Of a stretch of DNA of 64,000 nt, positions 431 to 48,927 are shown piece by piece (within the stretch, counting starts at the first letter, position 1; each line of letters begins with the position of its first letter). Origin of the DNA: Tubulanus polymorphus (Eukaryota > Animalia > Nemertea); NCBI RefSeq assembly GCF_964204645.1, contig NC_134030.1, positions 20,482,210-20,546,209 on the forward strand, written 5' to 3'. The notes beneath the pieces were generated by a model, which was not told the origin of the DNA, ran no database searches, and saw only the letters and a list, made by a program, of their open reading frames with translations. The position numbers and the translations under genes were made by a program.

Positions 431-845
431 ATGCAATCGACCGTCCGGTGAAGGTCATGTGGATACTCCAACACCACAGCAACAGGTTGATGATACAACA
501 TGCGAGATGTTAAGTATCTACGAAGAGCTTGATGATGACAGTGATTCCGATAATGTTTCAAATCCAGTCAGAAATATTAAAACTGGATTATTACATAACA
601 TACCAATTCACAAGGACATCGAAGCCGGGGCAGATACAACTGCATATATGGATATGGAAGCCGCGAAGGGCATAAATACAACTCCTTATATGGATATGGA
701 AGCCGCGAAGGGCATAGATACAACTCCTTACATGGATATGGAAGCCGTGAAGGGCATAGATACAACTCCTTACATGAATATGGAAGCCGCGAAGGGTATA
801 GATACAACTCCTTACATTGATATGGAAGCCGAGAAGAAAGAATAA
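431..845 (+). CDS. Gene A1 terminal exon: cytoplasmic tail with 5 YxxM motifs (YMDM x3, YMNM, YIDM) and SIYEEL; upstream exons lie outside the window
   Basis: Acceptor atttcag|A at 430/431, phase 2. The frame is open to TAA at 845. It contains a 42-bp/14-aa tandem repeat and is paralogous to 34828-35431. Confidence 0.85.
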
Positions 846-869
846 CTGTAAGAGTAAAACAAGAATCAA

Positions 870-1110
870 AAAACAGAATCATAACCAAATTATACTGCCC
901 ACTCTCCTCCTCTATTCAAAAAGTTAAACATTCTCAAAATAAACATTCTCAAAATAGACATTCTCATATAAAAACCACCCTATTCATCCATCAAATTCTA
1001 CTATCATTACCACATTATGTTTAAAAACATGTTCGCCATTGAAAACCACTATCGAAACATACAAAAACATTCTCAACATGATCACACACATTGTCTACCT
1101 GTAAACCATT
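870..1110 (+). mobile_element. Degenerate LINE (CR1/L2-like) 3' remnant, shared with 35450-35920
   Basis: Near-identical to 35690-35920. The longer copy translates to KNISPITGIINKTKNILDYQQLLTLYY, which resembles the C-terminal region of CR1/L2 ORF2. Confidence 0.5.
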
Positions 1111-1400
1111 ATTACGTTATGCTTTTCTTTGAAATAAATTGAAATTGAAATTGAAAGATGCTACTATATACATGAATACGGAATCAAGGAATTGCAATGA
1201 ATGATGCATTCATGGCGGAAGCGGAGAAGGCGGTGAGTTCATAGAAAGATGATATTGAACTTTAAATCTTGCGATCTTGTGGAAATTTGATTTGCTATAA
1301 GAATATATAATCAAAGTATTTCATTATTCATAACATGTGATTGATTTATCTAAAATGCATTTTTGTCATAAGGAAATGTGTTTTAAACCAAGAAAATAAT

Positions 1401-1451
1401 TACCACCATAGTGCCTCAACACCGCTGTGGTGTTGAGGCACTATGGTGGTA
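1401..1451. repeat. Short near-perfect palindrome
   Basis: taccaccatagtgcctcaacacc...ggtgttgaggcactatggtggta. Confidence 0.8.
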
Positions 1452-2437
1452 TTCCCGTTATTCAACACACTAGGGTGGAATTTTTTAAATTTTCCAATAG
1501 AAATTCAAGTAAAATTGAAAGTAGTTACATTTTAGGCCCACCTGATTCTACACGAAGAGACCCATTCTCGGAAAATGTACCGTATTGCATACAAAAAACC
1601 TCAACGATAAGCCTAGTAAATGGACTAGTTATGTCCAATCGATTTTTGAAAACTGCGGTTTAGGTTACATCCGGTATGAACAAAAATGTTCCCAACGTTA
1701 ATTATTTAATGGAATCAATGAAACTTAGATTGCAAGATCAATTTAGACAAGATTGGCGTCAAAACTTAGAGAAATCGTCAAAGCTAGATATTTATAACTG
1801 TAAAACCAGAATGGGGTATGGAAACATGCTTACTCTCACTTACTCCTAATCTGAGAATGACAGGGATAAAATTCCGATGCTCGAACCATGCAACGGTGAA
1901 TCGGTAACTTTTCGGGTTTTGAGTTTTCATTTTGTGTTCTCAGAGGTTTGAGAAAGCTGTCAACGTTTCATGTACTAGTTTTATAATTTTGAAATCACGT
2001 GAAGATATTGCAACATGGTTGATGGGGAAATATTAAATTACTGGCATACTCAGTGAGTATTTCATACTATTTGCAGTGTTGATTTTAGTAGATTATGGTA
2101 TAATAACATAAGAGAATATTCCGTAGTATAAGAGTATAACATAAATCAGTGAGGTAATTCCATTAAATTAAGGCGAAATATTATGATGCAAGATAAAGGT
2201 CAACTTTTTGTATTGCGCAATCTAGCAATAGCTCAGATATTATAAGTTTGTATTATCTGTTTACAGATTTGAATCGTCTAAAATCCGTTGAATAAAGAAA
2301 CATCAATATGATATCCGGAGTTTGTTATTTGTCGGACGTATTCAAAAGCCACCACTTGAAACCCCATCGAGCCAGTCGGTGCATCGGCCGTATACCGCAA
2401 ACTGCTTACAATGTACAACAGCAGTTCTTTGACTTAT

Positions 2438-2541
2438 TTACAGTCCATAAAAAAACATCCCACATAGTATCATTACAAAGATTCGCCGAAATGCACCACC
2501 AGCAACATTTCCTCTATTACCAATCGTCTTAGCCGTCTTTT
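2438..2541 (-). CDS. Gene B1 terminal exon: GPI-signal-like C-terminus EKTAKTIGNRGNVAGGAFRRIFVMILCGMFFYGL*
   Basis: Minus-strand acceptor ttttaag|, phase 1, in frame with the 3200-3427 exon. It shares NVAGGAF with the B2 terminal exon. Not present in the ORF track. Confidence 0.7.
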
Positions 2542-3199
2542 CTTAAAAGATAGAAAAGCTTAAATAAATAACATGACTGTGAAAATAATGATAAAAATAT
2601 TTTAACAGTCTATAGAACTGAAACCACTAACGATTTCCAAAACATCTCATCATTTTGTTAATATTGAAGTGTTTGTATTTTGTAATTTTGTTTATCAACA
2701 CGGATCTGTTCAATTCCATACGTCTGTCTGGCCTAAAAGATGTGCCGTAAATCTCGCCTTACGCAGACATAGCGGGACCGATGAAATTGGTTAAAGTATG
2801 ATTTGAGGATATGAAAATACATAAGGAAGTCAGAAAACGATATCGTTTTTGTCCGAGTTACGATGTCAAAAGTCCGAGTTGGCGAACTCAGATCAACTCT
2901 TACTGTTATTTACTGTCTGTTTACATTTTGGATACACGGGATCATATCACACCTGTCGATCAGTTCTTGAACACACCTATCGACAGATTTATCGTAAATC
3001 GAATGATTATTGATTTTGTTGGATATAGCGCGTATATTCGGTGCGAATGGGAAAAACCATTTCCAGTATGAATAAAACTAACCAGTTGGTATCTAAATAT
3101 TCAAAAACGTTTTTGAAAATGGCTCATAGAATTGAGTTGAAACGTTAAGCTACCAGATAGTTTTTCTTTTATTGTGGGTTTTTATCTACTAAAACTAAC

Positions 3200-3427
3200 C
3201 TGGTTCATCATTTCGACCGAGATCACGACGACGAATGTCAATGAAGCGTTTACCATTTAGCAGACACCTCCCTCTATAATCATTTGTGATACTGTTCACA
3301 ATCGGTACCGAAACAATCCATTTGTCGTTTGATTGTTTCTGAACATCGGCTGGCGGGTCACATGTTAGTTTTTCCGTCTCTGCATTTCTAGTTATGGATA
3401 CATTATAGTACCGAGCTGTTGCAAGGT
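3200..3427 (-). CDS. Gene B1 exon: short Ig-like domain D
   Basis: 228 nt, phase 1-1, gag acceptor and gttagt donor. LTCDPPA...W..SVPIVNS.TNDYRGRC is homologous to 37630-37857 and 16524-16790. Confidence 0.8.
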
Positions 3428-3935: not shown

Positions 3936-4038
3936 TTAAGGTGTTTGGGTCGGCTGGACCGTTAGAGGCTGGGCAACACAGCCAGTTTCACGAGGGTGTA
4001 GCAATATGTACACATTAGTATGTAGTTTAAATATCCAC
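3936..4038. repeat. ~100-bp inverted repeat pairing with 8454-8556, probably the terminal repeat of the second Penelope-like element
   Basis: ttaaggtgtttgggtcggctggacc...tatccaca is the reverse complement of 8454-8556. A partial second copy lies at ~4075-4127. Confidence 0.75.
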
Positions 4039-5299: not shown

Positions 5300-6716
5300 A
5301 ATCCCACAATAAGTTCAGCCAAAACGAGAAACTTGAATAGAAGAGTTATATATATTTGCGCAACGTTTCGGCTAAAGACTATTAGCCATCATCAGGCGTA
5401 CTGAGTACAGGAGAATATTACAAGATATTTATACAAGACCAAAACAATAGAAGCAGAGTGAGTGATTAAAATATTGAAAGGGGAATAGATTAAAGTAATG
5501 ACATAACAACTAGAAAACAATGCTAAAGTAAGCAAGGCAAACTAGGGGCAATGTAGATAAAAGTAATTAATAAACAAAGACACAAGCTAAAGTGATTAAA
5601 ACGGGAGGACAAGCTAAGGGGTAATCAAATAAAACAAAGAGAAGGAACATGAAAGGCGATAATCAGTGAGTGAGTGGAAACAAGCAAACTATGATAAAGG
5701 CAAAACAATGGAGGGAATTAGTATAACGGGGGTACAAGAGAAGCGAGAAATTTGGAGATCAAAATGTTGTGGGGGGAGAAACCGTTATTCAAATTAACAC
5801 AATTTTCCAAGTTTTCAATAATCAGGGCCGATTCCATAATGTGTCGTTTAATCTTTTCTGAACAGGGGAAAATTATGGAGGCATTTTCAAAATCAAAATT
5901 GTGGCTGGTTTCGTATACGTGATTGGCAACACCGCTTTCAGGCTTAAAATTCTTTACATCATTCTTATGTTCACGAATGCGCTTGTGTAAATCGCGTCCG
6001 GTTTCGCCGATATATATTTTGTTACAAACTTTACAGGGAATTTTATATACACCAATGTTCAGGGGTTCAATTTTGGGGGAGTTATGAGTAAGATTACGAC
6101 TAAGTTTGTTGTTATAAGTAAAAATGAGTTGTTTGTTTAAGAGATGGAGGGGAGTTTTAGATTTTTCCAGAAAAGGAACAAAAGGTACAATAATAGGCTG
6201 TTTACGCGCGCGGGTCCCTTGAGAGTGACTGAAATGTGAACGACGGGCTCTCAAGAGAGCTTTATTCAAAATGTCGTCGGGGTAAGCTAATTTATTAAGA
6301 GAGGTCTTGATCTGGGTTAGTTCATCATCCAAGAAAAGGGGGTCACAAATCCTTAATGCGCGAAGGAATAAGCTTTGGGCAACACTAAGTTTAATGTTAT
6401 GAGCGGTGAAGGAGAAATAATGTAGGTATACTCTCCCTAAACTTTGGTTACGATACGTTGATGATATTCTTGCCCTTATACCTTTTGACTTTGATATTGA
6501 TCAATTTCTCACATTTATTAACTCTTTTTATCCCTCCTTGAACTTCACATTTGAATTGGAAGTTAATGGGAAAATCCCTTTCCTTGATGTTTGTATACAC
6601 AATTGTTTGTCTTGTCTAAAATTCTCGGTTTATAGGAAACCTACCCACTCTGGAACATACCTACATTATTTCTCCTTCACCGCTCATAACATTAAACTTA
6701 GTGTTGCCCAAAGCTT
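5300..6716 (-). mobile_element. Penelope-like retroelement (GIY-YIG endonuclease ORF 5718-6332) with an inverted RT fragment at 6430-6716
   Basis: GVYKIPCKVCNKIYIGETGRDLHKRIREH matches the Penelope GIY-YIG signature. The + strand fragment reads WLRYVDD...FTFELEVNGKIPFLDV...VYRKPTH. 6370-6429 is an inverted copy of 6657-6716. Confidence 0.9.
5361..5396 (-). ncRNA. Hammerhead ribozyme core in the Penelope terminal repeat
   Basis: Minus strand reads CTGATGA-t-ggctaa(tagtct)ttagcc-GAAAC, i.e. the conserved CUGANGA/GAAA core with a perfect stem II. Confidence 0.75.
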
Positions 6717-6719
6717 GGA

Positions 6720-8556
<1,837 letters not shown>

Positions 8557-11222: not shown

Positions 11223-11571
11223 TATGAACTTCAATCATATCAAACTCAACAGGTTTCGGATTTGTAGGATTTTCCTTTACAAGACATCTAAATGATGATC
11301 CATTGTGAAGTTTGGAATCTGCCTTGAATTTTAGCTGTGCGTAAACAAGTGCGTTCTGTTTGATATATCTGTGAAGTCGTATATCTCCAAAAACTGGTCC
11401 CCACGATTCAGAACCGCGTCTCTTCTGTTGAAAAATCAGCGTAGTCGTCGATTTTCCAACCCCTGTTCTGCATAGGTATTGTGTATCGACCCCCTCGAAT
11501 CTTATGTCCGGCCGTCCAATGGGACCCCGATAATTATCGATATAATAAGGTAATTCTGAAACATATTGTAA

Positions 11572-11620
<49 letters not shown>

Positions 11621-11793
11621 TGTCTGTCTGTCTGTGTCTGTGTGTGTGTCTGTGTGTGTCTGTGGCTGTGTGTGTGTGTCTGTGTGTGTGTGTGCGCGTG
11701 TGCGCGTGTGCGCGTGTGCGCGTGTGCCTTTGCCAGCGTGATATCCAGACAGAGTATCACAGGGATTATCGATAACAACCTCATTATTACCAT
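11223..11793 (-). CDS. Gene B1 5' part: signal peptide (ATG 11793), in-frame (CA)n-encoded His/Thr linker, Ig-like V domain (11223-11555)
   Basis: MVIMRLLSIIPVILCLDITLAK is followed by an uninterrupted frame into ELPYYIDNYRG...YLC...W...FRC...EVH|gtaagt. The V segment is 333 nt, as in B2. Confidence 0.8.
11577..11727. repeat. (TG)n/(TGTC)n/(CGTG)n compound microsatellite
   Basis: Directly visible in the sequence. Confidence 0.95.
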
Positions 11794-12133: not shown

Positions 12134-12221
12134 ATGGCCTTCAACCATTTCGTATATACCTGGACAGTCTTACTGCTGGTGATTCACGACACACGAGCGT
12201 CTCAAAAAAGTATTATTTCAG
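12134..12221 (+). CDS. Gene C1 exon 1: signal peptide MAFNHFVYTWTVLLLVIHDTRASQKSIIS
   Basis: ATG, hydrophobic core, phase-1 donor G|gtaggt. The paralog at 45818-45905 has the same length and keeps the frame. Not present in the ORF track. Confidence 0.8.
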
Positions 12222-12289: not shown

Positions 12290-12560
12290 TGCATGTTTCT
12301 CCATCGCAGTGATTCAAACCTGATGACATCATGAGGCTCTGCCACGTTCCTCCCTCGGCCGGGTTTCGAACTTGATGACATCGTGAGACTCTGCCACGTT
12401 CCTCCCTCGGCCGGGATTCGAACTTGATGACATCGCGAGACTCTGCCACGTTCTTCCCTCGCACGGATTCGAACCTGATGCCAATGTGAGATTCAGCCAC
12501 GTTCCTCCTACCTGATGACGTCGTAAGACTCTGCCACGTGCCCCTCAAAAGGTTTTGAAC
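12290..12560. repeat. ~50-bp minisatellite in C1 intron 1 (about 5 degenerate units)
   Basis: Unit gatgacatcgtgagactctgccacgttcctccctcg..gggattcgaacct. Homologous arrays lie at ~15015-15125 and 45975-46858. Confidence 0.85.
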
Positions 12561-12738
12561 CGGTTGCTCTGTGCATATCTTCGATGGATTTACTTGACAA
12601 TGAAGGGAATAAATATCGAGTCATTCAATAGGCTCCACAAGTAATACAGACTGTACACAGGTCTTACAAGTAGGGCCTATAAATATGTCTAATACTGATC
12701 GCTTATAGATGAATTCTTAACTTACTTTTATATTTCAG

Positions 12739-13032
12739 CACCTTATGGAGTTGTACTGGAAAGCATGAATGTATTACTGGGTACACATTTATTATTGTCG
12801 CAGGAAGGTAAAACTGTTAATATTACTTGTAAACAAAGCAACGCTGCAGCGACTGGTGTACACTTCCAGCTTCACGAGAAAAATGCAGCAGGAGGACCCT
12901 GGACTCGAATACCTCTTACCTCATCTAAACCAGTGTGGACAATTTTACCCGATGCTGGAAAACAATATAGATGTGTGGCCAATAATTCAGCCGGAGCGAA
13001 AAGAAGTAAATTCTACAAATCGGATGTTATCA
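12739..13032 (+). CDS. Gene C1 exon 2: Ig domain P1
   Basis: 294 nt, phase 1-1. EGKTVNITC...W...DAGKQYRCVANNSAG is an I-set/C2-type Ig motif. Confidence 0.88.
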
Positions 13033-13869
13033 GTGAGTACCTTTGGTGGAAATACATTTCCCATGTAGGATGAAGCTAGTCGTCCTTGCGATGTTGGCCA
13101 TATCATACATGGTGCTTTAATATCACTTAAAATCTCCAGCTAATGTAATGGTACTTAAAAGTTGTCTACCCATGTTGTATCACTAACAATCTTCGCCAAT
13201 GTTGTGGGATTAAAGCTTCTACCTGTGTCGTGACTACTGAATCTCTTATATCGTGATCCGACTGGTCACCAATGTTGTACTACCTTATGCTACTAGTTCT
13301 TCGGTCTGCTTCTTCCTCGAGTTAGTTATTAAACACTTCTATCTGCTATGATCACGTTTTGCTTTCCATATTTTACCTCCTACTCGTTTCTTTCTCTGTT
13401 CCACTTTTCCTTCCCTTGAGCCAAAACCTTAGACGTATATACCTACCTAGTTCCCGCATTCCTCGAATACCTAAGCAATGACCACGTCATCTTCTAACCT
13501 GACCCTGGTTTGCTTAGTCCCAGTACTTCTATTCTACTCCCTCGACTAGTGCTAACCATCTCATATAATTCCTTATATTTCAAAATTAGGAAATAATGCT
13601 CTTCTCCCTTTCATACAAGCAGTTACCTTTCAGCGTGCGCACAAGCACACATTACACACACGCTGTGTACTCATACATTGGCTCTACAGTGCAATCAAAC
13701 GCATTAAGGAGCACTATGTCAGACAGAGAATATCATCAGGAATCCAGTGTAGCGGTTTATTTTGTTTACCTCCACCAGAAAAAATATTTTTGGGCCATTT
13801 CTATTTCTTACTTATTTAAGGTAAAAAGAAGATTTTTGGGCCAATTATTTCTTATTTATTTATTTTAAG

Positions 13870-14178
13870 GTATTAAGATAAATGAGTGTAAGCAGCTTGT
13901 TCAATCATTGGATTGTACTTGCAAAGCCGTTAGTAAGATCGGTGAAGCAAACTTGAACGTTGCATTTTATCCTAACGGATTCGAAGATAAACGTCTTGAT
14001 TTCTATTTGAGTCGGGCCCCAACGGAGCAAAAAGTGATAAAGAATGGAGTTATCAACAGAATTTCGTGGGATCTATCGACAATGAGGTTTGCCACTGCGA
14101 TTCAATGTCGTTTGTCGACGTACAATGGTAAAAAACCAGCAAATAGAATAGAACATCAACGTAAAGTGGACGTAACGT
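13870..14178 (+). CDS. Gene C1 exon 3: Ig-like domain Q1
   Basis: 309 nt, phase 1-1, ttttaag| ... |gtaagt. Reads LDCTC...IQCRL...KVDVT, with three paralogous copies in the window. Confidence 0.82.
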
Positions 14179-15301
14179 GTAAGTTTTGAACATTTCTATC
14201 AATGAACTAAACAGCAGTAAACCCGAAAAACACAACTGAACAGCTTTTAACAAATCAGCTTTTGTGGAATATTGTGCCGGTCTTTCGAGGTCCCCATTGT
14301 TGCGAGAATTTTCGCTCATTTTTGAAATATGAGTTTTGATTGAATATCAATTAGCTCTGCAGTCCCTTGGTGAATTTAATCATATAATCAGCAAAAAGGA
14401 AATGAAATGCAGATATGTGCCGAGTTCCTTGAACGCACCAATTTAGAGCAGTGACGATGAGAAACCAAGGACCGTATATTCTGGCCATTTCTAAATGTTT
14501 CAAGACTGCTAATCGGTAGTCAGTGCGGAATGTTTGGTTTTCTAAGAATAATTAGGGGTCGTAGGTTGTCATGATTTACATGAATTTCATGGATTCGAAC
14601 CCAACACCCGAACGGCCAGTTGACAGCAAACAACAGCCTAAGCAGTATTGTACTGGGGAACGTTCTTCGCGAAATCTAAACGGCCAATTTTCTCATCCAA
14701 GCAACTAAGCATAACTCCTTGCTTCTGATGCCAACAGCTATTAATAAGCACACGGATCACACTACTACCGATCTTACTCCTGTACGTACCGACGATAATT
14801 TGTTATTTATGATAGTAATTTAATGGTGTAGAGATTCGCGATGTCATCAATTCGAATCTGTCCTCATGAGGGAGGAACATGGTTGTATCTACGAGTTGAG
14901 ATGATTGCTCTTGGTAGAGTCGCGCGATGCCCACCAGATTCAAATCCCTAGCGTAGCACATTGTCTCTCTGCTTGAAAGGCGTAGCAGCGGTTAGCGATG
15001 GCCCAGGCCCCATTTGAACCTGATGGCAATGTGAGACTTTGCCACATTTCTCCGTCGGCAGGGATTCGGACCTGGCGACGATGTTAGACTCCCCCACATT
15101 CCTCCCTCAAAAGGTTTTGAACCTATTGCTCTGAGCATATCTTCGTTGGATTCATTTGACAATGAAGCGAATAAATATCGAGTCATCCAATAGGCTCCAC
15201 AAGTAATACAGACTGTACACAGGTCTTACAAGTAGGGCCTAATGAATATGTCTAATACTGATCGCTTATAGATGAATTCTTAACTTACTTTTATTATTCA
15301 G

Positions 15302-15595
15302 CACCTTATGGAGTTGTACTGGAAAGCATGAATGTATTACCGGGTACACATTTATTATTGTCGCAGGAAGGTAAAACTGTTAATATTACTTGTAAACAGC
15401 GCAACGCTGCAGCGACTGGTGTACAATTCCAGCTTCACGAGAAAAATGCAGCAGGAGGACCCTGGACTCGAATACCTCTTACCTCATCTAACCCAGTGTG
15501 GACAATTTTACCCGATGCTGGCAAACAATATAGATGTGTGGCCAATAATTCAGCCGGAGCGAAAAGAAGTAAATTCTACAAATCGGATGTTATCA
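15302..15595 (+). CDS. Gene C1 exon 4: Ig domain P2
   Basis: 294 nt, near-identical to 12739-13032, splice sites intact. Confidence 0.88.
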
Positions 15596-15861
15596 GTGAG
15601 TGCCTTTGGTGGAAATACATTTCCCATGTAGGATGAAGCTAGTCGTCCTTGCCATGTTGGTATTCTGGCCATAACCCTAACTGGACAAAAGCACAGATCC
15701 GCACCTCTTATAAATGGTGCTGTAATATCACTTAAAATCTCCACCTAATGTAATGGTACTTAAAAGTTCTCCGCCAATGCTGCTTCCACCTGTCGGCGGC
15801 GTGTGTGTATTTATAATTGAAATAAAAGTATACTATTATATAATGATATTATATTATACAG

Positions 15862-16170
15862 GTTTAAAGATAAATGAGTGTAAGCAGCTTGTTCAATCAT
15901 TGGATTGTACTTGTAAAGCCGTTAGTAAGATCGGTGATGCAAACTTGAACGTGGCATTTTATCCTAACGGATTCGAAGATAAACGTCTTGATTTCTATTT
16001 GAGTCGGGCCCCAACGGAGCAAAAAGTGATAAAGAATGGAGTTATCAACAGAATTTCGTGGGATCTATCGACAATGAGGTTTGCCACTGCGATTCAATGT
16101 CGTTTGTCGACGTACAATGGTAAAAAACCAGCAAATAGAATAGAACATCAACGTAAAGTGGACGTAACGT
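15862..16170 (+). CDS. Gene C1 exon 5: Ig-like domain Q2
   Basis: 309 nt, near-identical to 13870-14178, splice sites intact. Confidence 0.82.
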
Positions 16171-16523
16171 GTAAGTTTTGAACATTTCTATCAATGAACT
16201 AAACAGCAGTAAACCCGAAAACAACAACTGGAGCAACTTTTAACAAATTTTTCAAGGTTCTGTTTTCTTGGAATTTCTTTTAGTTCCATATTACTACGCT
16301 TTTATGTTTCAGCTTGCGCATTAATTCTCCGATTTACTCTTAAATTAACTCGAAACATTGCACTATAATGCCGAATATCAGACTTGGGCCGATGTATATA
16401 TTTAGCGTTTGATTATGCTGGTGTAATGAACAGTGATGAAGACTCAGAGGTCGTTAGTTGTAGAATCTATCATGACACAAGTTCATGCTTGTTATTTCAT
16501 CCACGTTTGTTTCGTTTGTTCAG

Positions 16524-16790
16524 ATTTTAGGCCCGATTTCAAGAAAAGCGGTGAAAATGAAACGAATGCAGCGTATATCGTAACCATATATAGTTATCCG
16601 ATGACGAAAGAAGTTACATGTGACCCTCCAGCTGTCGTTCAAAATCTATCGAACTCACAGTGGAATATAACGATACCAATTGTAGACAGTACCACAACTG
16701 ACTATAGCGGGCAGTGTTTGGCAGATGGTAAAAATGAAAACGTCATCGATGTCGCTGGTTATCATCGAAATGCTCCCACTGGTGAAGCGG
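16524..16790 (+). CDS. Gene C1 exon 6: membrane-proximal Ig-like domain D
   Basis: 267 nt, phase 1-1. VTCDPPA...WNITIPIVDSTTTDYSGQC is homologous to the B-gene D exons. Confidence 0.82.
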
Positions 16791-17002
16791 GTAAGATCCA
16801 AACAAATCATGAACCGGATTTTACTTTATTTCTCTGAACAATCGGATGATTTTTTGTATGATTTAATGAATTAGATTCGCTCGCGATGCATGTTTGTTAC
16901 AAATACGAGAAGTTGCAAAACATCTATTTATGCTAGCCTAATAATCGATACAAATACTGATTTATTTAGACTTGAGAATTTTATTTGCTGATGTTTGGAT
17001 AG

Positions 17003-17101
17003 GAGGAAATGGAGAAACTGTGGGAATTGCGTCATCTATTTTGGGATTCACGTTATTTCTCGTTTTGACGATCTCGTTTGTACTTTGGTACTGTGGCAAT
17101 T
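17003..17101 (+). CDS. Gene C1 exon 7: transmembrane helix GGNGETVGIASSILGFTLFLVLTISFVLWYCGN
   Basis: 99 nt, phase 1-1, tag| ... |gtaagt, with a hydrophobic stretch of ~23 aa. Confidence 0.8.
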
Positions 17102-17181
17102 GTAAGTTATACTTGAAACTATCATCGAATTAGAAAAGAACTATTACAGAAATAAAAGACTTTTTTATTGCTTATTTTCAG

Positions 17182-17232
17182 TGCGTTTCGTCAAAAACCC
17201 TAAGAAAAAAGAACAGCCTAATGGTGGAAATG
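17182..17232 (+). CDS. Gene C1 exon 8: basic juxtamembrane segment LRFVKNPKKKEQPNGGN
   Basis: 51 nt, phase 1-1, tttcag| ... |gtaagt. Confidence 0.75.
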
Positions 17233-17368
17233 GTAAGTTCTACAAAACGAATTGGGCATGTAACTGGAATAATTGAAAAACTGGATTAAACCAATCATGA
17301 TTAATCCCTAGTTCGGGATTTCACTGGCAAGTAAGATCGGATGATCGAATATACTTACTGCTTTGTTT

Positions 17369-18820
17369 AGTGTATGTGACTATAGCCATGGTTGACCGTG
17401 ACCGACCCAATGGTACTACGAGAAAGTTATTGCCTGATGTTGATGATCTAAGTCGCCGCGAACCCTCAGCAACCTGACAGCGAAGAAACCGATGCAAACT
17501 AATTTTCGTTTGACTCTACCTGATTATGAAAATTAAAATAGTGACGGATTATGTCTAACTCTAAAAGCGATGACAAAGATCTTTTTTTTCGAATTGTCTC
17601 TTACAAAAAAATGATGTAATTATTACGAGTCATTATTGTTTGAGTTACGATAAGTGAATGTTAGGCATTATTGTTGAATTCCGTAGAAAATAAAAAGCCA
17701 TCACCTGCATAACTTTTGAATTTATCTGAAGCGTTTGAACCCCTTAATTTCTAATGGCATCTGGTAATTCAATATTGAACGAAATCATCCATCACATTTC
17801 CGTTGATGCTATCAATACTGAACTGTTGGTCCATGGCTCCAGCCTCAAACCATTAGCTTTAAATGTCATCATTTAAACCACGGTCCAAAATTTGTATATT
17901 ACTCAAAACGGTTAGAATAAGACATATAGATCATATCACACCTTAACAACCATGACATCGAGGGAATAATTTATTTGTTTGTTTATTCATTCATGTATTT
18001 ATCTATTCTTTTACTCTTTAAAAATAGGCTTAATTGTAAACTGATTACTCACCTCATCATCTCACCATACATCTCCCTTATCGAAAATTACCACCAAAAT
18101 AAAAATTAATTTTCAATCAGTACATCCTATGAGTTTCATGCTCCTTATATGTAACTTACCGATGTATCTTTAGGTAATGTTTCAGGAATAGATAAATTTC
18201 ATCGTTGTTGCAAATCATTTGTAGAACGAATCGATTTCTGTGCTCCAAAGTAAAATGTACTTGGTTGATCCTACTGGACGCGTGGTCCTTCGGTATTTCT
18301 TCTGCTTCACTTGTCGAACATATACGTTACCCCCAAAATTATCATCCCCTCAATCCATACCGTGCCTGTTGTGTGTCAGCGAGCGTGAATAATGTGAGAG
18401 AGTGTCTGGATGACCAAGTAACAGGCAATTTGCTGCATTCATATTGTTCGTGTACATACACGTGTAACTGTGTCGAAGATGAGCTGCACTTCATCTTAAC
18501 GTGTAGTAAATTCAACAAGGAAGAAATTTAATTTGGTAAATGTTGGTGTAAATAATGTAAATATAATTTTTAATGATATGGGTTGTCAAGCGGAATTGGT
18601 AAATTCCGGGAACATATCCAATTGTGATTGAATTTTATATCTTATTTTTGTGCTTGAGGTTTTTTGTGTTCCGTACCTGTCTCGTGAATTTTTCTTGTAA
18701 ATATCTTTGTAATTCTGGTATTGTATATATGTATATATTGTTTTCCTTTTCTTCTGTTTCGCTGTCCATTGACGATCATGTCATTTGATTATGATGAATA
18801 AACCAAATAACCAACTAAAT
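17369..18820. repeat. Block duplicated at 62579-64000; contains a LINE 3' remnant
   Basis: Colinear, highly similar sequence. CNCVEDELHFILTCSKF resembles the zinc-knuckle end of LINE ORF2. Confidence 0.85.
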
Positions 18821-21800: not shown

Positions 21801-23667
21801 ATACATGTAGTACCAATACCAATTCATGTTACGTGTCCATTAGTTTAAGGACCTAATGATTCACCACTCCAATGACGTATACGAAATATACTAAAGCTGA
21901 TATCAATCAGACGGTGGTTGTTCGGTGTTAGGAGCGGTTCGCGTCGCTGTTAATTCAATCTATAAACATAACGTATTTGTTGTGCTACAGAAGTCGATAC
22001 TTGAAAAAAAAACATCTCTATGATCATGACTTGCTAGTGGGTGCGCTTTTACGGCGACGATTCCTCACCCGAGTCCAGCATGACATATAGCGCCAGTGTC
22101 CGCCGAACTGCCGCGATGATAAAACATAGGCTATCAACACGAAAAGAGTTAAAGAATTTTTCTAAGGCATTAGAGAGGTGGCTAGCCACCCTATTCAACC
22201 CAATGTTCTAGGAATGAATTTCAATTTATTACAATTTTTTAGTGAGTAATAACGACTTGGTTTGAAGACGCGTTCGAAAAGTAGATTATTATTGCATTGA
22301 TAAATCTATTCGTTTAGAAGGAATAAATGTTGAATGATGTATGAGGTTTGATTTGTTGCACAAATATGTTTTGCTCGCATGCCATCGAAATGATTATCCG
22401 GGTTGCTCCCCTGTCCCAGGGGTGTCACTCAGGCATCAAACCTTAACTATGAATATTGTTTGTTAAAGTCAGAATTACTGTTTTCTTTTTCAGATCAGCT
22501 ATTCCTCACTTCCCATTATCAGCACCTGATTGCTGCCAATACCACGGGGCTGACTGAACCAACGCTGCTTGAGAACATAAGAACTAATCCGTTGCTCCAC
22601 ACGGATATGAATCGGTGGTGAGTAGATTTGTTTTTAACAGAAAATGTCATGTATCAAAATTAAATCATAAGTTTTAATGGTGAGCGTCGCAATTCTATTT
22701 TTCTAGATGAGCCTTTCTACCTCCTCGTGACTACAGCAACGACAGCTCATTGGGCTTTAACCCTTCCCAACATCTCCACTCAAGACCTAATTGCTGCCTA
22801 AACCAGCCTGGCCCAAACATACAATCCTCATGACGTAATTGCTGTTGGGATGTGAGAACTGTAGCCTGGATGTTACATCTCCCGAAGAAAAGTTAACTGA
22901 TCGAAAAAATCCGTGCAGCTTCGCTCATGAATTGGTGAGTAGACATTTTAACTGTTTGTTGTATCGGAAGTTAGGTCGGGTCGTTACAGCAAACTCAGAT
23001 ACAGTTAGATCCTTACACTCCTCTCGAATTAACTTGTGACCAATTTGTGTTTGAGTTTAGGTGATGATTCAAGTTTTTCGAATGAAGCTGATATTCTATT
23101 GTTGAAATTATTATGAAGTTAGGTCGGGTTAAAGCTTATCAAACAGACTTTCGTCACAAAGATGCAGCGGAATTTCTCTAAACTCGAATCGTTTTGTAAC
23201 CAGTGATGTATAGTGGGAGTTACGGTGATCATTCTAATCACTCCCGTATTCAAGAAGTATTTTTTGTTTCAATGGTTTTAAAGATCTAATATTTGTAAAC
23301 AAGTAGATAACGATGATGAGACTCGAAAGCATTTGCCATAAGTGGAGTGTCAAAATGTTGGGCAATTTGTCAGATAAAGAAACCTTTGATCTATTCGATA
23401 AACTTAATGACGAAATATTATCAGTAAAACCGACTTTTTATCAACCGGTTCATTTGTCCAGGACATTCATACAGTATTTTTAGAATAGTCGAACTAGGGC
23501 TTGTGACTGTGGTCACATATCTTAAGTTTAAAAATTTGTTTAGAAAAATCAGTCTCCCTTGTCTCGCGAAAGTGCGCTGATAAGATATATCGGTTTTTGT
23601 AATTACACAATATTATTTCTGATCGATTCGAATTGTATTGCAAAATTTAGACAGTCCCGCGTGCACA

Positions 23668-23915
23668 CTGTCCCGGTTGAATACATATCGTCCCGCTCAA
23701 CACAGTCCTGGTTGAATACATACCGCCCCGGTTGAATACACGCCGTCCCGGTTGAATACACGCCGTCCCGGTTGAATACACGCCGTCCCGGTTGAATACA
23801 CGCCGTCCCGGTTGAATACACACCGTCCCGGTTGAATACACGCCGTCCCGGTTGAATACACGCCGTCCCGGTTGAATTCACGCCGTCCCGGTTGAATGCA
23901 CTCCGTCCCGGTTGA
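23668..23915. repeat. 20-bp minisatellite (gccgtcccggttgaatacac) x ~12
   Basis: Directly visible tandem units. Confidence 0.95.
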
Positions 23916-24072
23916 TACGCTGAAATTCACACAGAGCAAAGCGTCATTCTTCAAGCATGAGTCATAAATTTTGCACCATACATATTGACATGTCCCAGTA
24001 ATAAGACAGCAATTCTAAGTAAATTCTAAGTAATTTCTAGTAGACACTGTATAATTTTATTCTTTATTTCAG

Positions 24073-28339: not shown

Positions 28340-28584
28340 GTATGGCAGGGGACACTGATCCGTGCTAATCTGTAAAGTTTTCTCTGGGAGTTTGAAATCA
28401 AAATCTGAGGATGTTGAGTAACTGGTCTGTACTGGTCTGCATCGTGTTACTGCAGCTGGGAAACGTACACAATGCAGAATTGTCTGGAGTGAAGGGAAAG
28501 AGAAGTAAGTTATCCATATATATATAAAATCCTTCAAAAAAGTTTCAAATAACATGTAATCATTCGACAAACCATTCGTTTCAG

Positions 28585-28923
28585 GTGATCTACCATTCAT
28601 TGGCCCGTACCCTGCTCCCGATGGTAAGCCGGACAGGAGAAACCAAGGACAGAGGGTAGATTATTTCTGTAGAATTAGGGCTGGAAAGTCAGATACTACT
28701 TTGATATTTGAACAGAAGAGACGAGATTCTGAATCATGGGGACCAGTTCTTGGGCATATGCGATTTCACAGAGGTGTCACAGATGACGCATTCGTTTACG
28801 CTAAGTTAGAATTCAATGCAGATTCCAAACTTCACAATGGAACGAATTTTAGATGTCTTGTAAAGGAAAATCCTACAAATCCTGAACCTGCTCAGTTTGA
28901 TCGACTTGAAGTTCTTAATATCG
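28585..28923 (+). CDS. Gene A2 exon: Ig-like V domain
   Basis: 339 nt, phase 1-1. YFC...LIFEQKRRDSESWGPV...HNGTNFRCLVKENPTNP is paralogous to the B1 and B2 V exons. Confidence 0.85.
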
Positions 28924-32363: not shown

Positions 32364-32389
32364 ATCATTCAACTTTGAATCCCTCATTG
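32364..32389 (+). CDS. Gene A2 micro-exon DHSTLNPSL
   Basis: 26 nt, tttcag| ... |gtgagt. It converts phase 1 to phase 0 exactly as needed to join the V exon to the stalk/TM exon. Confidence 0.7.
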
Positions 32390-32688: not shown

Positions 32689-32942
32689 AGTGACTACATC
32701 AATCAGACTACATTGGGTCCCAGTAACCGGGTCGCACCTGACCAGATCACTGCTCGGACTACAAGTGACCAGATCACAACTGATCGGACTACGACTGACC
32801 AGACTACTGCTGATCAGACTGCAACTGACCAGATTCCAACTGATCGGTCTACATCCGACTGGACCAATGTGATACTGTACATCACCAGCGGAGTAACTGG
32901 ATGTATTTTAATCATCATCATGGCTGAAATCATCATGCGCAG
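32689..32942 (+). CDS. Gene A2 exon: Thr-rich stalk (15-bp repeat, DQxTT-like) and TM helix VILYITSGVTGCILIIIMAEIIMRR
   Basis: Phase 0-2. The donor AG|gtatga matches the phase-2 acceptor of the tail exon. Confidence 0.82.
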
Positions 32943-33240: not shown

Positions 33241-34827
33241 GATCAGGAAACAAGATGGTTTGTCATAAAATCAAAATTTGAAATGGGTTTGGGAAGAAAT
33301 ATCTAGCATCAAATGTTTATTTGTCAACAGGTTTTAATTTGTATTGTTGAAATTTGATAACTGTTAGCATTCATTGGACACATCTCCTCATAGCGAATTT
33401 TGTTCTTACCACCATCAATTAAATATTGAAATGTATTGAATACGTTCACTAGGCTAACGTTCACTGGGGGTGTTGAATTGTCGAGTAACATATTAGTTTC
33501 CATTCATATTGATATGAATTTCGTAACTGCATTTAATTGGACGGTTTGTAGCTTTAGCGTTAATCTTTCTACTTACGAGTCGTTTCGGGAACTAACTCGA
33601 TATAGATGACGACGACTATGACATTTCAGTTGAAGACGACTTTATTCTGCACTTTGCATGTGTCTGAATTTCATGCAGACTCCAAGGCTGACTTTGCGAG
33701 AATGCCCGTATCTAACGATTCTTCTGAATCTTAGTTTGAAGTTAAACATAATATTGGTTACAAACAGAACAAACAGAGGGACATGTGACAGACTGGCAGG
33801 TGACAGGTGTCAAACTGGTCATTGTTTCATACAATGAGGACGGATTAATGAATTACTAAACAAACAAATGAGCAGATACTAATAGTTAAGATGAAATACT
33901 AATACTTAAGATACAATAATATCAAAGTAGAAATGGCTTTGTTATATTCTCCCTTACTACATTTGGAAAGTAAAAGAAATATAATAAGTGGAATATGGAG
34001 ACTGCTTGCTAAATATATGAAAGAGACTAGATATGACATTTAATTGATAAGAAAATTGAAGGAATTAAAATTAAGCAAATAATGTAATTGTTTTGTTATA
34101 TAGCTATTCGCATATTTTATGATTGCGGTGACTTTTAAAGCGATTGATCTTTGTATATGTTGACCAGGGGGATGTTATTGTGCTGTTTTCCTTAGGCTAG
34201 GTCTGGTGGCCAGTATGGCCAACTGGACACGATACTACAAGCACGAACTCTGGTATAGAATTGGTATATAATAATAATATTTTGCAGTTTGGCTACGTAT
34301 AGTATAGTACAGTCATTGTTATTGAACTACGTTACAGAAAAATTAGTCAACTATATAAAGCAGTTACAACTGTGTATAATACATTATACATGAACATCTC
34401 AGAGTACATAAAATCTTGGAGTAATCATTTGACAAATCAAATGATTACTTCCAAGATAAAAATCCTCAACAGTTATACATGATAGAGCAGGAGACAGTGT
34501 CGTTACTATAGTCGACTGGAAAGATTCCAGACTAAGGATGAGAGCTAGCTATTTATCCAGAGCACCCATCCAGAACTATTATTGTTCTAATTTGCAATCG
34601 TATAAAAATCATGGCCTAAATTATTTCAAGAACTACCCTGCATTACGGACGATATCAAGATCTAGGTTTCATACTTATAAAATAGTTAATTTACGCATTT
34701 GGACATGTTGAATTATATATAGCATGACATATTTGTATCATCCGAAATATGATCTCATTTCACTTTTTCGATCGAAGCTCCTTGAAATTGCTTGTTATTC
34801 TATCCGAGAATGAATTTCCCATTTCAG

Positions 34828-35431
34828 ATGCAATCGACCGTCCGGTGAAGGTCATGTGGATACTTCAACACCACAGCAACAAGTTGATGACACAGCAAAC
34901 GATATGTTAAGTATCTACGAAGAGCTTGATGACGACAGTGATTCCGATAATGTTTCAAATCCAGTTAGAAATATAGAAACTGGATTACTACATAACATGC
35001 CAATTCACAAGGACATCGAAGCCGGGGCAGATACAACTGCATATATGGATATGGAAGCCGGGAAGGGCAAAGATACAACTCCTTACATGGATATGGAAGC
35101 CGGGAAGGGCAAAGATACAACTCCGTACATGGATATGGGAGCCGGGATAGAAGAGGACACATACATGAGCACTGAAGGCGCGATACGCGATGATACAACC
35201 CCTGTCCCTAGCGCTGAGGGAGACAAAGATGCAGATCAATACATGAATCCTGAAGCTTTGGAGACGACGTATCTTCAGTTGACGGAAGATACCGATGAAC
35301 CTGTGGAAGATGATGTTGAACTTTATTCTTATGCTACTGTTGAATACAAAGCTCCTTACATGAATATGGAAGCCGCGAAGGGCATAGATACAACTCCTTA
35401 CATTGATATGGAAGCCGAGAAGAAAGAATAA
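34828..35431 (+). CDS. Gene A2 terminal exon: acidic tyrosine-rich cytoplasmic tail (5 YxxM plus YEEL, YMST, YMNP, YLQL, YSYATV)
   Basis: Acceptor atttcag|A, phase 2, open to TAA. Paralog of 431-845 with 63 extra aa. Confidence 0.87.
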
Positions 35432-37173: not shown

Positions 37174-37316
37174 TTAATTATACAAAAGAAATACAAAGAG
37201 TCCACCGAATGCACCACCAGCAACATTAACTCCATTACCAGATCCTCCGTTAGTATTAACTCCAATAGCATTAACTGCATTTGTATTGGTATCATAGGTA
37301 TTGACATTGTTTTTCC
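37174..37316 (-). CDS. Gene B2 terminal exon: Asn/Gly-rich spacer and short hydrophobic end ...GGSGNGVNVAGGAFGGLFVFLLYN*
   Basis: Phase-1 acceptor. The four B2 exons sum to 774 nt (257 aa). Homologous to the B1 exon at 2438-2541. Confidence 0.7.
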
Positions 37317-37629: not shown

Positions 37630-37857
37630 CTGGTTCATCATATCGACCGAGATCACGATGGCGAATGTCAATGAAGCGTTTACCATTCAGCAGACACCTC
37701 CCTCTATAGTCAGTTGTGATACTGTTCACTATCGGTACCGAAACCATCCATTTGTCGTTTGATTGTTTCCAAACATTGGCTGGAGGGTCACATGTTAGTT
37801 GATTAGCCTCTGCATTCCTAGTTATGGATACATTATGGTACCGAGCTGTTGCAAGGT
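37630..37857 (-). CDS. Gene B2 exon 3: short Ig-like domain D
   Basis: 228 nt, phase 1-1, ttacag| ... |gttagt, open frame. Not present in the ORF track. Confidence 0.82.
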
Positions 37858-38328: not shown

Positions 38329-38543
<215 letters not shown>

Positions 38544-38795: not shown

Positions 38796-39128
38796 TATGA
38801 ACTTCAATCGGATCAAACTGAAGAGGTTTCGGATTTGTAGGATTTTCCTTTACAAGACATCTAAAAGTCGTTCCATTGTGAAATTTGGAATCCGCCTTGA
38901 ATTTCAGATTAGCGAAAACAAGTCCGCTCTCTGTGACATATGTGTGAAGTCGAATATGCCCAAGAACTGGTCCCCATGATTCTAAACCTCGTCTCTTCTG
39001 TTCAAAAATCAGCGTAGTCGTCGATTTCCCAACCATCGTTCTGCAAAGGTATCGTGTCTCGAACCCCTCGAATCTTATGTCCGGCCGTCCAATGGGACCC
39101 CGATAAGTATCGATATAATAAGGAAATT
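38796..39128 (-). CDS. Gene B2 exon 2: Ig-like V domain
   Basis: 333 nt, phase 1-1, tttcag| ... |gtaagt. Confidence 0.85.
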
Positions 39129-39399: not shown

Positions 39400-39469
39400 C
39401 TGTCTTTGCCAGCATGATATCCAGGCAGAGTATCACGCAGATTATCGATAACAACCTCGTTATTACCAT
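39400..39469 (-). CDS. Gene B2 exon 1: signal peptide MVITRLLSIICVILCLDIMLAKT
   Basis: ATG, hydrophobic core, phase-1 donor G|gtatgt. Paralogous to 11728-11793. Confidence 0.82.
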
Positions 39470-45817: not shown

Positions 45818-45905
45818 ATGACGTTCAGTCATTTTGTTTATACCTGGATAGTCTTACTGCTAGTGATTAACGACACAGAAGGGCTTCAAACAAAGATTAA
45901 TTCAG
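45818..45905 (+). CDS. Gene C2 exon 1: signal peptide MTFSHFVYTWIVLLLVINDTEGLQTKINS
   Basis: 88 nt, G|gtaggt donor, paralog of 12134-12221. Confidence 0.78.
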
Positions 45906-45974
45906 GTAGGTCACTACAGTCATATTTATTGAAAGAATATATCGTTCTCTCAACCTCGCAGTGATTCGAACGCT

Positions 45975-46858
45975 GCCACATTCTCCCTCACAGGGAATTG
46001 AAACTGATGACATCGTGAGACTCTGCCACATTCTCCTTCGCAGGGAGTTGAACCTGATGACATCATGAGACTCTGCCACATTCTTCTCCCTCACAGGGCG
46101 TTGAACCTGATAACATCGTGAGACTCTGCCACATTCTCCCTCACAGAGATTTGAATCTGATGGCATCGTGAGACTCTGCCACATTCTCCCTCACAGGGAG
46201 TTGAACCCGATGACATCGTGAGACTCTGCCACGTTCCTCCCTCGCAGGGATTCGAACCTGATGACATCGTGAGACTCTGCCACATTCTCCTTCGCAGGGA
46301 GTTGAACCTGATGACATCGTGAGACTCTGCCGCGTTCCTCCCTCACAGGGAGTTGAAACTGATGACATCGTGAGACTCTGCCGCGTTCCTCCCTCACAGG
46401 GAGTTGAAACTGATGACATCGTGAGACTCTGCCACATTCTCCTTCGCAGGGAGTTGAACCTGATAACATCATGAGACTCTGCCACATTCTCCCTCACAGG
46501 GAGTTGAAACTGATGACATCGTGAGACTCTGCCGCGTTCCTCCCTCACAGGGAGTTGAACCTGATAACATCATGAGACTCTGCCACATTCCCCCTCACAG
46601 GGAGTTGAAACTGATGACATCGTGAGACTCTGCCACATTCCATCCTCACAGGGAATTGAACCTGATAACATCATGAGACTCTGTCACATTCTCCCTCACA
46701 GGGAGTTGAACCTGATAACATCATGAGACCCTCCACATTCTCCTTCGCAGGGAGTTGAACCTGATAACATCATGAGAGTCTGTCACATTCTCCCTCACAG
46801 GGAGTTGAACCTGATGACATCATGAGAGTCTGCCACATTCTCCCTCACAGGGAGTTCA
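45975..46858. repeat. Expanded ~50-bp minisatellite (about 17 units) in C2 intron 1
   Basis: Unit gatgacatcgtgagactctgccacattctccctcacagggagttgaacct. Confidence 0.95.
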
Positions 46859-47715
46859 ACATTATTCAAAAACGAATGTTAATAAACTAGTATGTTTATA
46901 AACAAAATGAATTATTTACTTACGTAGAAGTAGTAATGTTTATTTTCTTGCAAGGCTTGCAAGGCTTGATAAAATCAAATAACTCTAGACTAGTGATGTG
47001 TTTTTTCAGATACATATTTAACGCCGCCGAACTCATAGAATAGTTCAGAGTTCTTCAATTCGTCTTAAATTTAGTATGATATGCTTAGGAAAATATCAAA
47101 TTCAAAACCAACTGATAACTTATCATTAGAGATAACGAAAAACATTTAACACGAAACAAAACATTCTTTATTTTGCTTCTTGATTAAGCTTCTCAGTAGA
47201 GTTCGATTCAGACCGCCATGTCTTTTGCAATCCTTCAACACAGTGAAGAATGAATCAAAAAACGATGTTTTAGGTCAATTGCCAGTTCTTTCTAGTCCTG
47301 AAATGGTATTTTATCAGATATTTACTATCAAGCCCGACTGAGCTAGGCCACCGTCTGATGCGCTCTCTCAAGTCAAGTTGAAATGGACATTTCCAACCGC
47401 TCTAAAAGGGCGCGTACCAAGACGCACGTGCCATGTTACTATTTATATATAAGGTCATCGACTAACTCGTCTTGGAACTAATGATGACCATGTTGCTCCG
47501 TGCATATCTTCGATGAAGAGTCACCCAAAAGGCTACACAAGTAATACGGACTGTATATAGGTATATAGTAGGACCTAATGAATATGTCAAATACTGATCG
47601 CTTATAGATAAATCCTTAACTTTAATATTTCAGCACCTGATGGAGTTGTACTGTACAGTGCGAATGTATTACCGGGTACAAGAATATTACGTATATTGTG
47701 TATTTGATATTTCAG

Positions 47716-48003
47716 CACCTGATGGAGTTGTACTGGACAGTGTGAATGTATTACCGGGTACTAGAATATTATTGTCGGAGGAAGGTAAAACTGTTCGTAT
47801 TACTTGTAAACAGAGCAGCTCTACAGCGACTAGACGTGTGCAACTACAGGTGAATAATGGAGCAGGAGGGACCTGGACTCCAATAAAACTCAGTATATCG
47901 ACAGTGTGGAAATTTGTACCCGAGGCTGGAAAACAGTATAAATGTGTGGCCACTAATTCAGCCGGAACGAAAGAAAGTAAACTCTTCAAATCGGATGTTA
48001 TCA
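47716..48003 (+). CDS. Gene C2 exon 2: Ig domain P
   Basis: 288 nt, phase 1-1. Reads EGKTVRITC...W...EAGKQYKCVATNSAG. Confidence 0.82.
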
Positions 48004-48618
48004 GTTAGTATCTTTGGTGGAAAAACATTTCTCATGTAGGATGAAGCTAGTTGCCCTTGTCATGTTGGTAATTCTGGTCATAACTCCAGCTGGGCAAAAG
48101 TGCAGATCCGCACCTCTTATAAATAGTGCTGTAATATAACCTAACATCTACACCTAATGTAATGGTACTTAAAAGTTCTCTATACCAATGTTGTATCACT
48201 AACAATCTTCACCAATGTTGTGGGATTAAGGCTTTGTCGTGACTACTGGATTTCTTATATCGTGCTCTAACTAGTCATCAATGTTGGACTATCGGATTTT
48301 ATGCTACAGTTGCTCGGCCTATTTCTTCCTCAAGTTAGATGTTAAACAATTCTATCTGATATGATCACGTTTTGCTTTCCTTATTTTCCTTCTTACTCGT
48401 TTCATTCTCTCTTCTTTCTCTCTTTCGCTCTCTCCGTCTTCTCTCTCCCTCAATTCTTCTTCATGAGCAAAACCCTTAGACTTATATACCTATTTCCCAC
48501 ATTCATCACAAATTCCTAAGCAATGATCTCATCATCTTCTAACCTGACCCTATATGGTTTTCTTAGTCCCACTACTTCTACTCATACACATGAATATTTC
48601 TTAATTATTTTGTTTAAG

Positions 48619-48927
48619 GTATAAAGATAGATGAGTGTAGGCAGCTTGTTAAATCATTGGATTGTACTTGCAAAGCCGTTAGTAAAATTGGTGATTCAAA
48701 TCTAGCAGTGGCATGGTACCCTAACGGATTCGAAGATAAACGTCATGATTTCTTTTTTAGTCGGGCCCCAACGGTGCAAAAAATAATAGAAAATGGAATA
48801 ATCAACAGAATTTCGTTCGTATTATCGACGCTGGATTTTGCCACTGCGATTCAATGTCGTTTGTCGACGTACAATGGTATAAAACCGGCAAAAAGAATAG
48901 TACATCAACGTAACGTGGACGTAACGT
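48619..48927 (+). CDS. Gene C2 exon 3: Ig-like domain Q; no D or TM exons found downstream in the window
   Basis: 309 nt, phase 1-1, paralog of 13870-14178. Confidence 0.78.

What the first reader, a model, noticed from the sequence alone, without database searches (positions are those of the whole stretch)
431..48927. Tandemly repeated three-gene module of divergent IgSF surface proteins: signalling receptor, GPI-like partner and multi-Ig TM protein
Seen in sequence: phase-consistent exon chains give three architectures repeated in the order A-B-C-A-B-C. A is V-stalk-TM-YxxM tail. B is SP-V-D-hydrophobic C-terminus, on the opposite strand. C is SP-P-Q-P-Q-D-TM-short tail. A and B share the V domain, and B and C share the D domain. 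Established knowledge: clustered IgSF families that pair signalling and tail-less/GPI members with similar ectodomains are typical of immune and self/non-self receptor loci such as vertebrate CEACAM and LILR/KIR and the Hydractinia Alr complex. Inference: this is a lineage-specific invertebrate immune or allorecognition receptor complex. I do not recognise it as any named family.
Basis: partly seen in the sequence, partly recalled or inferred. Interest (0 to 1): 0.92.

Follow-up and report, generated by a model that had tools for sequence, protein, structure and literature searches.

The report
Ribbon-worm paired Ig receptor complex
This window is a decaying corner of a large, undescribed family of antibody-fold surface receptors in a ribbon worm, in which a receptor with a signalling tail is repeatedly paired with a multi-domain partner that elsewhere carries an immune 'alarm' (NLR) domain, which suggests a worm-specific immune recognition system.

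Summary
Mostly confirmed. The genome is the nemertean Tubulanus polymorphus. The exon chains are real: C1, A2 and B2 match RefSeq models, and an RNA-like run shows C1's splice joints. Corrections: A1 is frameshifted, B1 has lost its first donor and C2 lacks its D and TM exons. 'V' is a C2-set rather than V-set Ig domain, and D's fold is unproven. The A-B-C trio is a local derivative (four partly broken copies). The genome-wide unit is a head-to-tail A→C pair (about 20 pairs, ten in a row). A carries an Ig domain, a TM helix and repeated YxxM motifs. Canonical C is P-Q-V-D-TM plus a Cys-rich linker and an unknown helical region; four RefSeq C genes end in NACHT-LRR. B is an A/C chimera with a GPI-like end. 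The best reading is a lineage-specific immune receptor complex working like CEACAM paired and decoy receptors and sea-cucumber AjNLRC4. Function, tissue and polymorphism are untested. The scan had already noted the Ig-TM-NLR genes and A-C arrays on other DNA of this genome.

The parts
431..845 (+). A1 last exon (YxxM tail). The gene starts upstream of the window and its V exon is frameshifted (probable pseudogene)
2438..2541 (-). B1 last exon, hydrophobic C-terminus
3200..3427 (-). B1 D exon (GAG acceptor, also used by paralog LOC141906756)
11223..11555 (-). B1 V exon (C2-set Ig)
11556..11793 (-). B1 signal-peptide exon plus former intron; donor lost to a CA microsatellite, frame open (about 57 His/Thr-rich residues)
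12134..12221 (+). C1 signal-peptide exon; ATG 341 bp from the B1 ATG (head-to-head)
12739..13032 (+). C1 P exon 1 (Ig, Pfam ig 5.7e-5)
13870..14178 (+). C1 Q exon 1 (probable C2-type Ig)
15302..15595 (+). C1 P exon 2 (96% identical to P1)
15862..16170 (+). C1 Q exon 2 (98% identical to Q1)
16524..16790 (+). C1 D exon (beta-rich, two Cys; Ig fold inferred only)
16970..17101 (+). C1 TM exon (acceptor 16970 seen in RNA; 17003 in RefSeq X2)
17182..17232 (+). C1 tail exon 1
17371..17477 (+). C1 last coding exon; total tail about 53 aa with one Tyr
28411..28504 (+). A2 signal-peptide exon
28585..28923 (+). A2 V exon (AlphaFold pLDDT 86.7; best structural match Rst domain 2, Z 11.1)
32364..32389 (+). 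A2 short stalk exon
32689..32942 (+). A2 Thr-rich stalk plus TM exon
34828..35431 (+). A2 tail exon: 12 Tyr, 5 YxxM, one ITIM-like and one ITSM-like motif, 25% acidic
37174..37316 (-). B2 last exon, Gly/Asn spacer plus hydrophobic end (GPI-signal-like)
37630..37857 (-). B2 D exon
38796..39128 (-). B2 V exon (mosaic: first third C-like, middle A-like)
39400..39469 (-). B2 signal-peptide exon
45818..45905 (+). C2 signal-peptide exon
47716..48003 (+). C2 P exon
48619..48927 (+). C2 Q exon; no D or TM exon follows
62581..64000 (+). Surviving 3' part of C2 (copy of the C1 last exon and downstream DNA, 92% identical)

Best explanation
A lineage-specific innate immune receptor complex evolving by birth-and-death, exon shuffling and gene conversion. 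The basic unit is a tandem A→C gene pair. A is an activating receptor: ligand binding to its C2-Ig domain clusters it, a Src-family kinase phosphorylates its acidic YxxM repeats, and PI3K p85 docks to drive uptake or activation, perhaps tuned by an ITIM-like site. Canonical C is a multi-Ig sensor with a Cys-rich (probably palmitoylated) linker and a helical region; in some copies a tethered NACHT-LRR could oligomerise on clustering. In the window's sub-cluster C has lost V and its signalling tail, and a new GPI-like chimera B (A-like binding core on a C-type V-D scaffold) was added. C1 and B would then act as decoys or co-receptors for the same ligands as A. Shown: gene structures, copy numbers, pairing, C1 splicing, Ig fold of V and P, B mosaicism, and NACHT-LRR fusions as RefSeq models. 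Inferred: ligands, phosphorylation, PI3K binding, GPI anchoring, decoy role and the immune function itself.
For: Copy numbers and A→C adjacency. Ig-TM-NACHT-LRR in LOC141906641, -642, -708 and -709, with 920-930-aa open frames downstream of C ectodomains. Tethered and cytosolic NACHTs are interleaved on the tree, implying domain swapping. 38 of 94 tail tyrosines in seven A proteins are YxxM. V exons are more diverged than signal and tail exons of the same gene pairs at both site classes (dN p=0.002 and 1e-9; dS p=0.013 and 0.018). Variation sits in strands A-B and D-E (47-48% identity) against C-C' and EF-F-FG (77-83%). Many broken copies. Precedents: AjNLRC4 (PMC8699970) and CEACAM paired/GPI receptors (PMC2832619).
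Against: No expression-by-tissue, infection, ligand or polymorphism data. dN/dS of V among local paralogs is 0.4-0.8, and no pair is convincingly above 1 (best one-sided p 0.049, uncorrected). No NACHT gene lies in the window. I did not test the Ig-TM-to-NACHT junctions with reads. No ITAM was found in A. The YxxM motifs come from a tandem repeat, so they are not independent.
Confidence: 0.62

Rival explanations
1. Heterophilic cell-adhesion or neural recognition code (Kirre/nephrin, Dpr/DIP or Beat/Side-like): A and C are each other's binding partners and are co-duplicated to keep matched pairs.
For: V's best structural matches are domain 2 of Rst, SYG-2 and SYG-1. Strict 1:1 A→C pairing. Nephrin tails use Tyr motifs to recruit PI3K (own knowledge).
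Against: Identity to those proteins is only 11-18%, and CD79b and CD22 score within 1 Z. The family is not single-copy or conserved, turns over fast, has many pseudogenes and is fused to NLR domains.
Confidence: 0.15
2. Allorecognition or gamete self/non-self locus, as in Hydractinia Alr.
For: One main chromosomal complex of unusual IgSF genes with Tyr-motif tails, exon shuffling and pseudogenes, as in Alr (10.1101/2022.03.04.482883).
Against: Alr has V-set, I-set and Fn3 domains with ITAM/ITIM; this family has C2-type domains and no ITAM. Tubulanus is solitary (own knowledge). Allelic polymorphism was not shown (cannot separate alleles from paralogs).
Confidence: 0.13
3. The A-B-C repeat in this window is mostly neutral debris of segmental duplication; B and the tail-less C have no selected role.
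For: Three of six window genes are damaged. Upstream modules carry broken B and deleted C copies.
Against: C1 is well expressed and spliced. B2 and LOC141906756 are intact with dN/dS near 0.5-0.6.
Confidence: 0.1

Closest known systems
Mammalian CEACAM family (PMC2832619)
   Same: Clustered IgSF with signalling, short-tailed and GPI-linked members; binding domains shared by gene conversion; birth-and-death evolution.
   Different: No sequence kinship. C2-set rather than V-set distal domain; YxxM arrays rather than ITAM/ITIM pairs; fixed A→C gene pairing; NLR-fused members.
AjNLRC4 of the sea cucumber Apostichopus japonicus (PMC8699970; related AjNLR-new, PMC13133943)
   Same: Extracellular Ig domains, TM helix and intracellular NACHT; shown there to bind microbes and drive phagocytosis.
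   Different: AjNLRC4 has two TM segments and no LRR. Tubulanus C-NLRs have one TM, 4-11 ectodomains and an LRR-like C-terminus, and belong to a paired multigene array. The window's own C genes have no NACHT.
Hydractinia Alr family (10.1101/2022.03.04.482883)
   Same: Invertebrate complex of dozens of atypical IgSF genes with Tyr-motif tails, exon shuffling and pseudogenes.
   Different: Different domain types (V, I, Fn3 against C2-type), ITAM present there and absent here; a role in allorecognition is shown there, not here.
Biomphalaria PTC1/PTC2 polymorphic transmembrane clusters (PMC7494358, PMC10875847)
   Same: Lophotrochozoan clusters of divergent single-pass receptors; weak TMEM154-like TM region (A2 E=7.8e-4, below the cut-off).
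   Different: Defined by allelic hyperdiversity and parasite-resistance mapping, neither tested here; ectodomains differ.
Anthozoan membrane-bound NLRs (PMC3879445, PMC5094078)
   Same: NACHT-LRR tethered to a membrane.
   Different: Three to five N-terminal TM helices and no Ig ectodomain.

Membership tests
Immunoglobulin superfamily | V domain adopts an Ig beta-sandwich | tested here: met
   AlphaFold pLDDT 86.7; Foldseek and VIA hits are Ig domains, Z up to 11.1
Immunoglobulin superfamily | P domain matches an Ig profile | tested here: met
   Pfam ig 23.8 bits, above the 21.8 cut-off
Immunoglobulin superfamily | Q and D domains are Ig folds | tested here: inconclusive
   Q: Ig_2 E 0.024 in 6 of 17 members; Atlas C2-set leads at 0.83 for the Q-D stretch. 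D: no Ig hit. The P-Q-D model failed, pLDDT 38.6
V-set Ig domain | V-set profile match and C'' strand | tested here: not met
   No V-set hit for isolated V exons; C2-set_2 up to 3.1e-5; best matches are domain 2 of Rst, SYG-2 and CD22
Paired receptor families (CEACAM/LILR type) | Clustered paralogs sharing an ectodomain with different tails or anchors | tested here: met
Paired receptor families (CEACAM/LILR type) | Opposing activating and inhibitory signalling on shared ligands | not testable with these tools
   Only motifs seen: YxxM, one ITIM-like, no ITAM
GPI-anchored protein (B) | Signal peptide plus omega site, spacer and hydrophobic C-terminus | tested here: inconclusive
   Pattern present by eye in B2 and LOC141906756; no predictor available; the hydrophobic stretch is short
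NLR (C paralogs outside the window) | NACHT plus C-terminal LRR | tested here: met
   NACHT E 3e-14 to 3e-16; HD2 and LRR_14 hits are weak (LRR E 0.001-0.003, below the cut-off). Gene models are RefSeq's; junctions not checked with reads
NLR (window genes) | NACHT exon in or near the window | tested here: not met
   No NACHT match between 18.45 and 22.26 Mb of C6
Hydractinia Alr | V-set + I-set + Fn3 ectodomain and ITAM-bearing tails | tested here: not met
Hydractinia Alr | Extreme allelic polymorphism controlling fusion or rejection | not testable with these tools
   one search gives only two samples as contigs
Kirre/nephrin or other conserved neural IgSF | Single or low copy, orthologs across phyla | tested here: not met
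   At least 65 V copies; no full-domain hit outside T. polymorphus

The most novel reading that the evidence does not exclude
A and C are genetically linked, co-evolving receptor pairs in which an Ig receptor with a PI3K-docking array works together with an Ig receptor wired directly to an NLR switch or to an unknown helical signalling module. This would be an animal surface counterpart of plant paired NLRs, with B and tail-less C as recently evolved decoys.
Probability: 0.2. Interest if true: 0.85.

Novelty: new variant of a known kind. Interest (0 to 1): 0.6.

Why it matters
My paper searches found nothing on nemertean Ig receptor families and nothing on this one. It shows a spiralian independently building a vertebrate-style paired and decoy Ig receptor complex, and plugging the same ectodomain into a Tyr-motif tail, an unknown helical tail or an NLR. 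It gives a concrete test of whether invertebrates gain recognition diversity by swapping signalling modules onto diversified Ig ectodomains, and of how a membrane-tethered NLR is activated from outside the cell.

Tried and rejected
Pfam finds nothing for the window's V, Q and D exons. PDB sequence searches with V, Q, D and helical-tail profiles gave no significant hit. Profile-profile Q/V and D/P comparisons were blank. AlphaFold of P-Q-D failed, so its fold search is uninformative. The Atlas had no usable hit for the helical tail. Candidate exons at 34196 (gives a stop), 20023, 22494 and 24073 were dropped; RNA supports 17371 as C1's last exon. Positive selection was not demonstrated. The one-clade test for tethered NACHTs did not finish.
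Full report
Source. The window is G000:C6:20,482,210-20,546,209 of a 267.8-Mb genome. Proteins matching it are RefSeq 'uncharacterized' products of the ribbon worm Tubulanus polymorphus, on contigs of the same lengths as C6 and C9.

Observation. Self-comparison and exon mapping recover six genes in the order A1(+), B1(-), C1(+), A2(+), B2(-), C2(+), with GT-AG introns that are phase 1 around the Ig exons. A and B share V (61-63%) and B and C share D (48-51%). C1, A2 and B2 match RefSeq LOC141906812, -813 and -814 X3. Laying four runs on 12,600-17,600 showed that X2 behaves as RNA, with GT..AG joints Q->D, 16790->16970, 17101->17182 and 17232->17371 and the signal exon joined to P. Because Q1 and Q2 are 98% identical, the Q->D joint cannot be assigned to one of them. 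A2 and B2 were not tested with reads. Three genes are damaged: A1 has a 1-nt frameshift in V; B1's first donor is replaced by a CA microsatellite that happens to keep the frame open; C2 stops after Q, with about 13 kb of repeats where D, TM and the first tail exon should be, and its 3' end resumes at 62,581.

Folds. V folds confidently as an Ig sandwich (pLDDT 86.7). Its best matches are the second domains of Rst, SYG-2 and CD22 (Z 10-11), and Pfam gives C2-set_2, not V-set. P passes the Pfam ig cut-off. Q has weak Ig_2 and C2-set signals and the B-strand Cys, C-strand Trp, F-strand Cys pattern. D has no profile support; by inspection it could be a compact Ig domain with a C-to-F disulfide, which is inference only.

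The family. The genome holds at least 65 V, 32 P, 33 Q and 29 D exons, mostly on C6 between 18.0 and 22.8 Mb, with more on C9 and C19. Reading those coordinates together with the tail matches, the repeating unit is an A gene followed head-to-tail by a C gene: ten consecutive pairs at 21.75-22.09 Mb spaced 26-43 kb apart, three at 22.76-22.82 Mb, two at 22.28-22.39 Mb, two at 18.34-18.44 Mb, one on C9 and the two in the window, about 20 in all. Canonical C is SP-P-Q-V-D-TM, sometimes with extra P-Q repeats up to 11 domains. After the TM comes a Cys-rich linker and, in about 16 copies, a multi-exon helical region with no known match. Four RefSeq C genes end in NACHT-HD2-LRR. Matching open frames of about 930 codons lie downstream of C ectodomains on the same strand. 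Their NACHTs are 65-74% identical to cytosolic NLRs of the same genome and interleave with them on a tree. Outside this species the V profile finds only summed weak matches to generic multi-Ig proteins; since few nemerteans are annotated, that bounds what is known, not the true range.

What the window adds. B-type D exons number four, all within about 110 kb around the window. Upstream lie two more partly broken modules, one inverted. B's V groups with local A domains on the tree, whereas C's V forms its own clade at 100/100. Its first 33 residues and exon ends are C-like (40-47% to C against 30-35% to A) and its middle is A-like (67-78% against 27-35%). B therefore looks like a C-derived V-D unit partly converted by A and given new signal and GPI-like exons. 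B lies tail-to-tail with A and head-to-head with C; the B1 and C1 start codons are 341 bp apart, so a shared promoter is possible (inference). C1 has lost V, duplicated P-Q very recently (dS 0.03-0.04) and has a 53-residue tail with one tyrosine.

Signals and divergence. A tails are acidic and carry 3-12 YxxM each; A2 has five plus one ITIM-like and one ITSM-like motif, and no ITAM. YxxM is the p85 docking motif of CD28, CD19 and IRS-1 (own knowledge). Between local A paralogs V is more diverged than the signal and tail exons at both synonymous and non-synonymous sites, as expected if flanks are homogenised while V variants persist. Differences concentrate in strands A-B and D-E. Average dN/dS is 0.4-0.8, so positive selection is not shown.

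Mechanism and rivals. Most likely (0.62) this is an innate immune receptor complex: A activates through PI3K, canonical C senses and signals through its helical or NLR tail, and B and tail-less C1 are decoys or co-receptors. All functional steps are inferred. Rivals are an adhesion or neural code (0.15), allorecognition (0.13) and local debris (0.10).

Comparison and novelty. It works like CEACAM paired and GPI receptors (PMC2832619) and like AjNLRC4 (PMC8699970), and resembles the Hydractinia Alr complex and snail PTC clusters in layout, but it is a member of none. The ingredients are known; their combination in a fixed gene pair was not found in my paper searches. I rate it a new variant of a known kind, interest 0.6. 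I found the NLR fusion, before consulting the scan's notes, which record the same fusion and A-C arrays on other DNA of this genome.

Noticed in passing
window 5718-8126 (-): Broken reverse-transcriptase and GIY-YIG-like ORFs (Penelope-like by inspection) inside B1's V-D intron, rearranged around a TA microsatellite.
   Followed up: no
window 23664-23920; RefSeq LOC141906814 X1/X2: RefSeq splices B2's D exon 14 kb away to an open 20-bp minisatellite, across gene A2, replacing the GPI-like end with a repeat peptide. Not checked with reads.
   Followed up: partly
window 47621-47771; L013:3195-3971: An 82-bp unit covering the P-exon acceptor and first 18 codons is tandemly repeated: twice in C2 and about ten times in the C9 C gene.
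   Followed up: no
window 12290-12560 and 45970-46860: 51-bp minisatellite in the first intron of C1 (about 5 copies) and C2 (about 17 copies).
   Followed up: no
window 50196-52190 and 59237-61964: Large inverted repeats (864 bp at 98%, 623 bp at 91%) with nested minisatellites fill the place of C2's lost exons; probably foldback or non-autonomous transposons.
   Followed up: no
P0012, P0007, P0094 cytoplasmic regions: A helical cytoplasmic region of 600-1000 aa, internally repeated, in most C genes and in front of NACHT in P0094 and P0106; no Pfam, PDB or Atlas match.
   Followed up: partly
L017-L020 (C9 4.2-5.1 Mb): About six A-type genes with two V domains and apparently no C partner; one V pair differs by 12 non-synonymous and 0 synonymous changes.
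   Followed up: partly
G000 C6 18.34-18.47 Mb (+) and 22.23-22.39 Mb (-): The two A/C-NLR clusters look like a large inverted duplication flanking the window.
   Followed up: no
P0004 (LOC141911244): RefSeq model joins a ubiquitin hydrolase domain to a family V exon; probably a mis-join.
   Followed up: no
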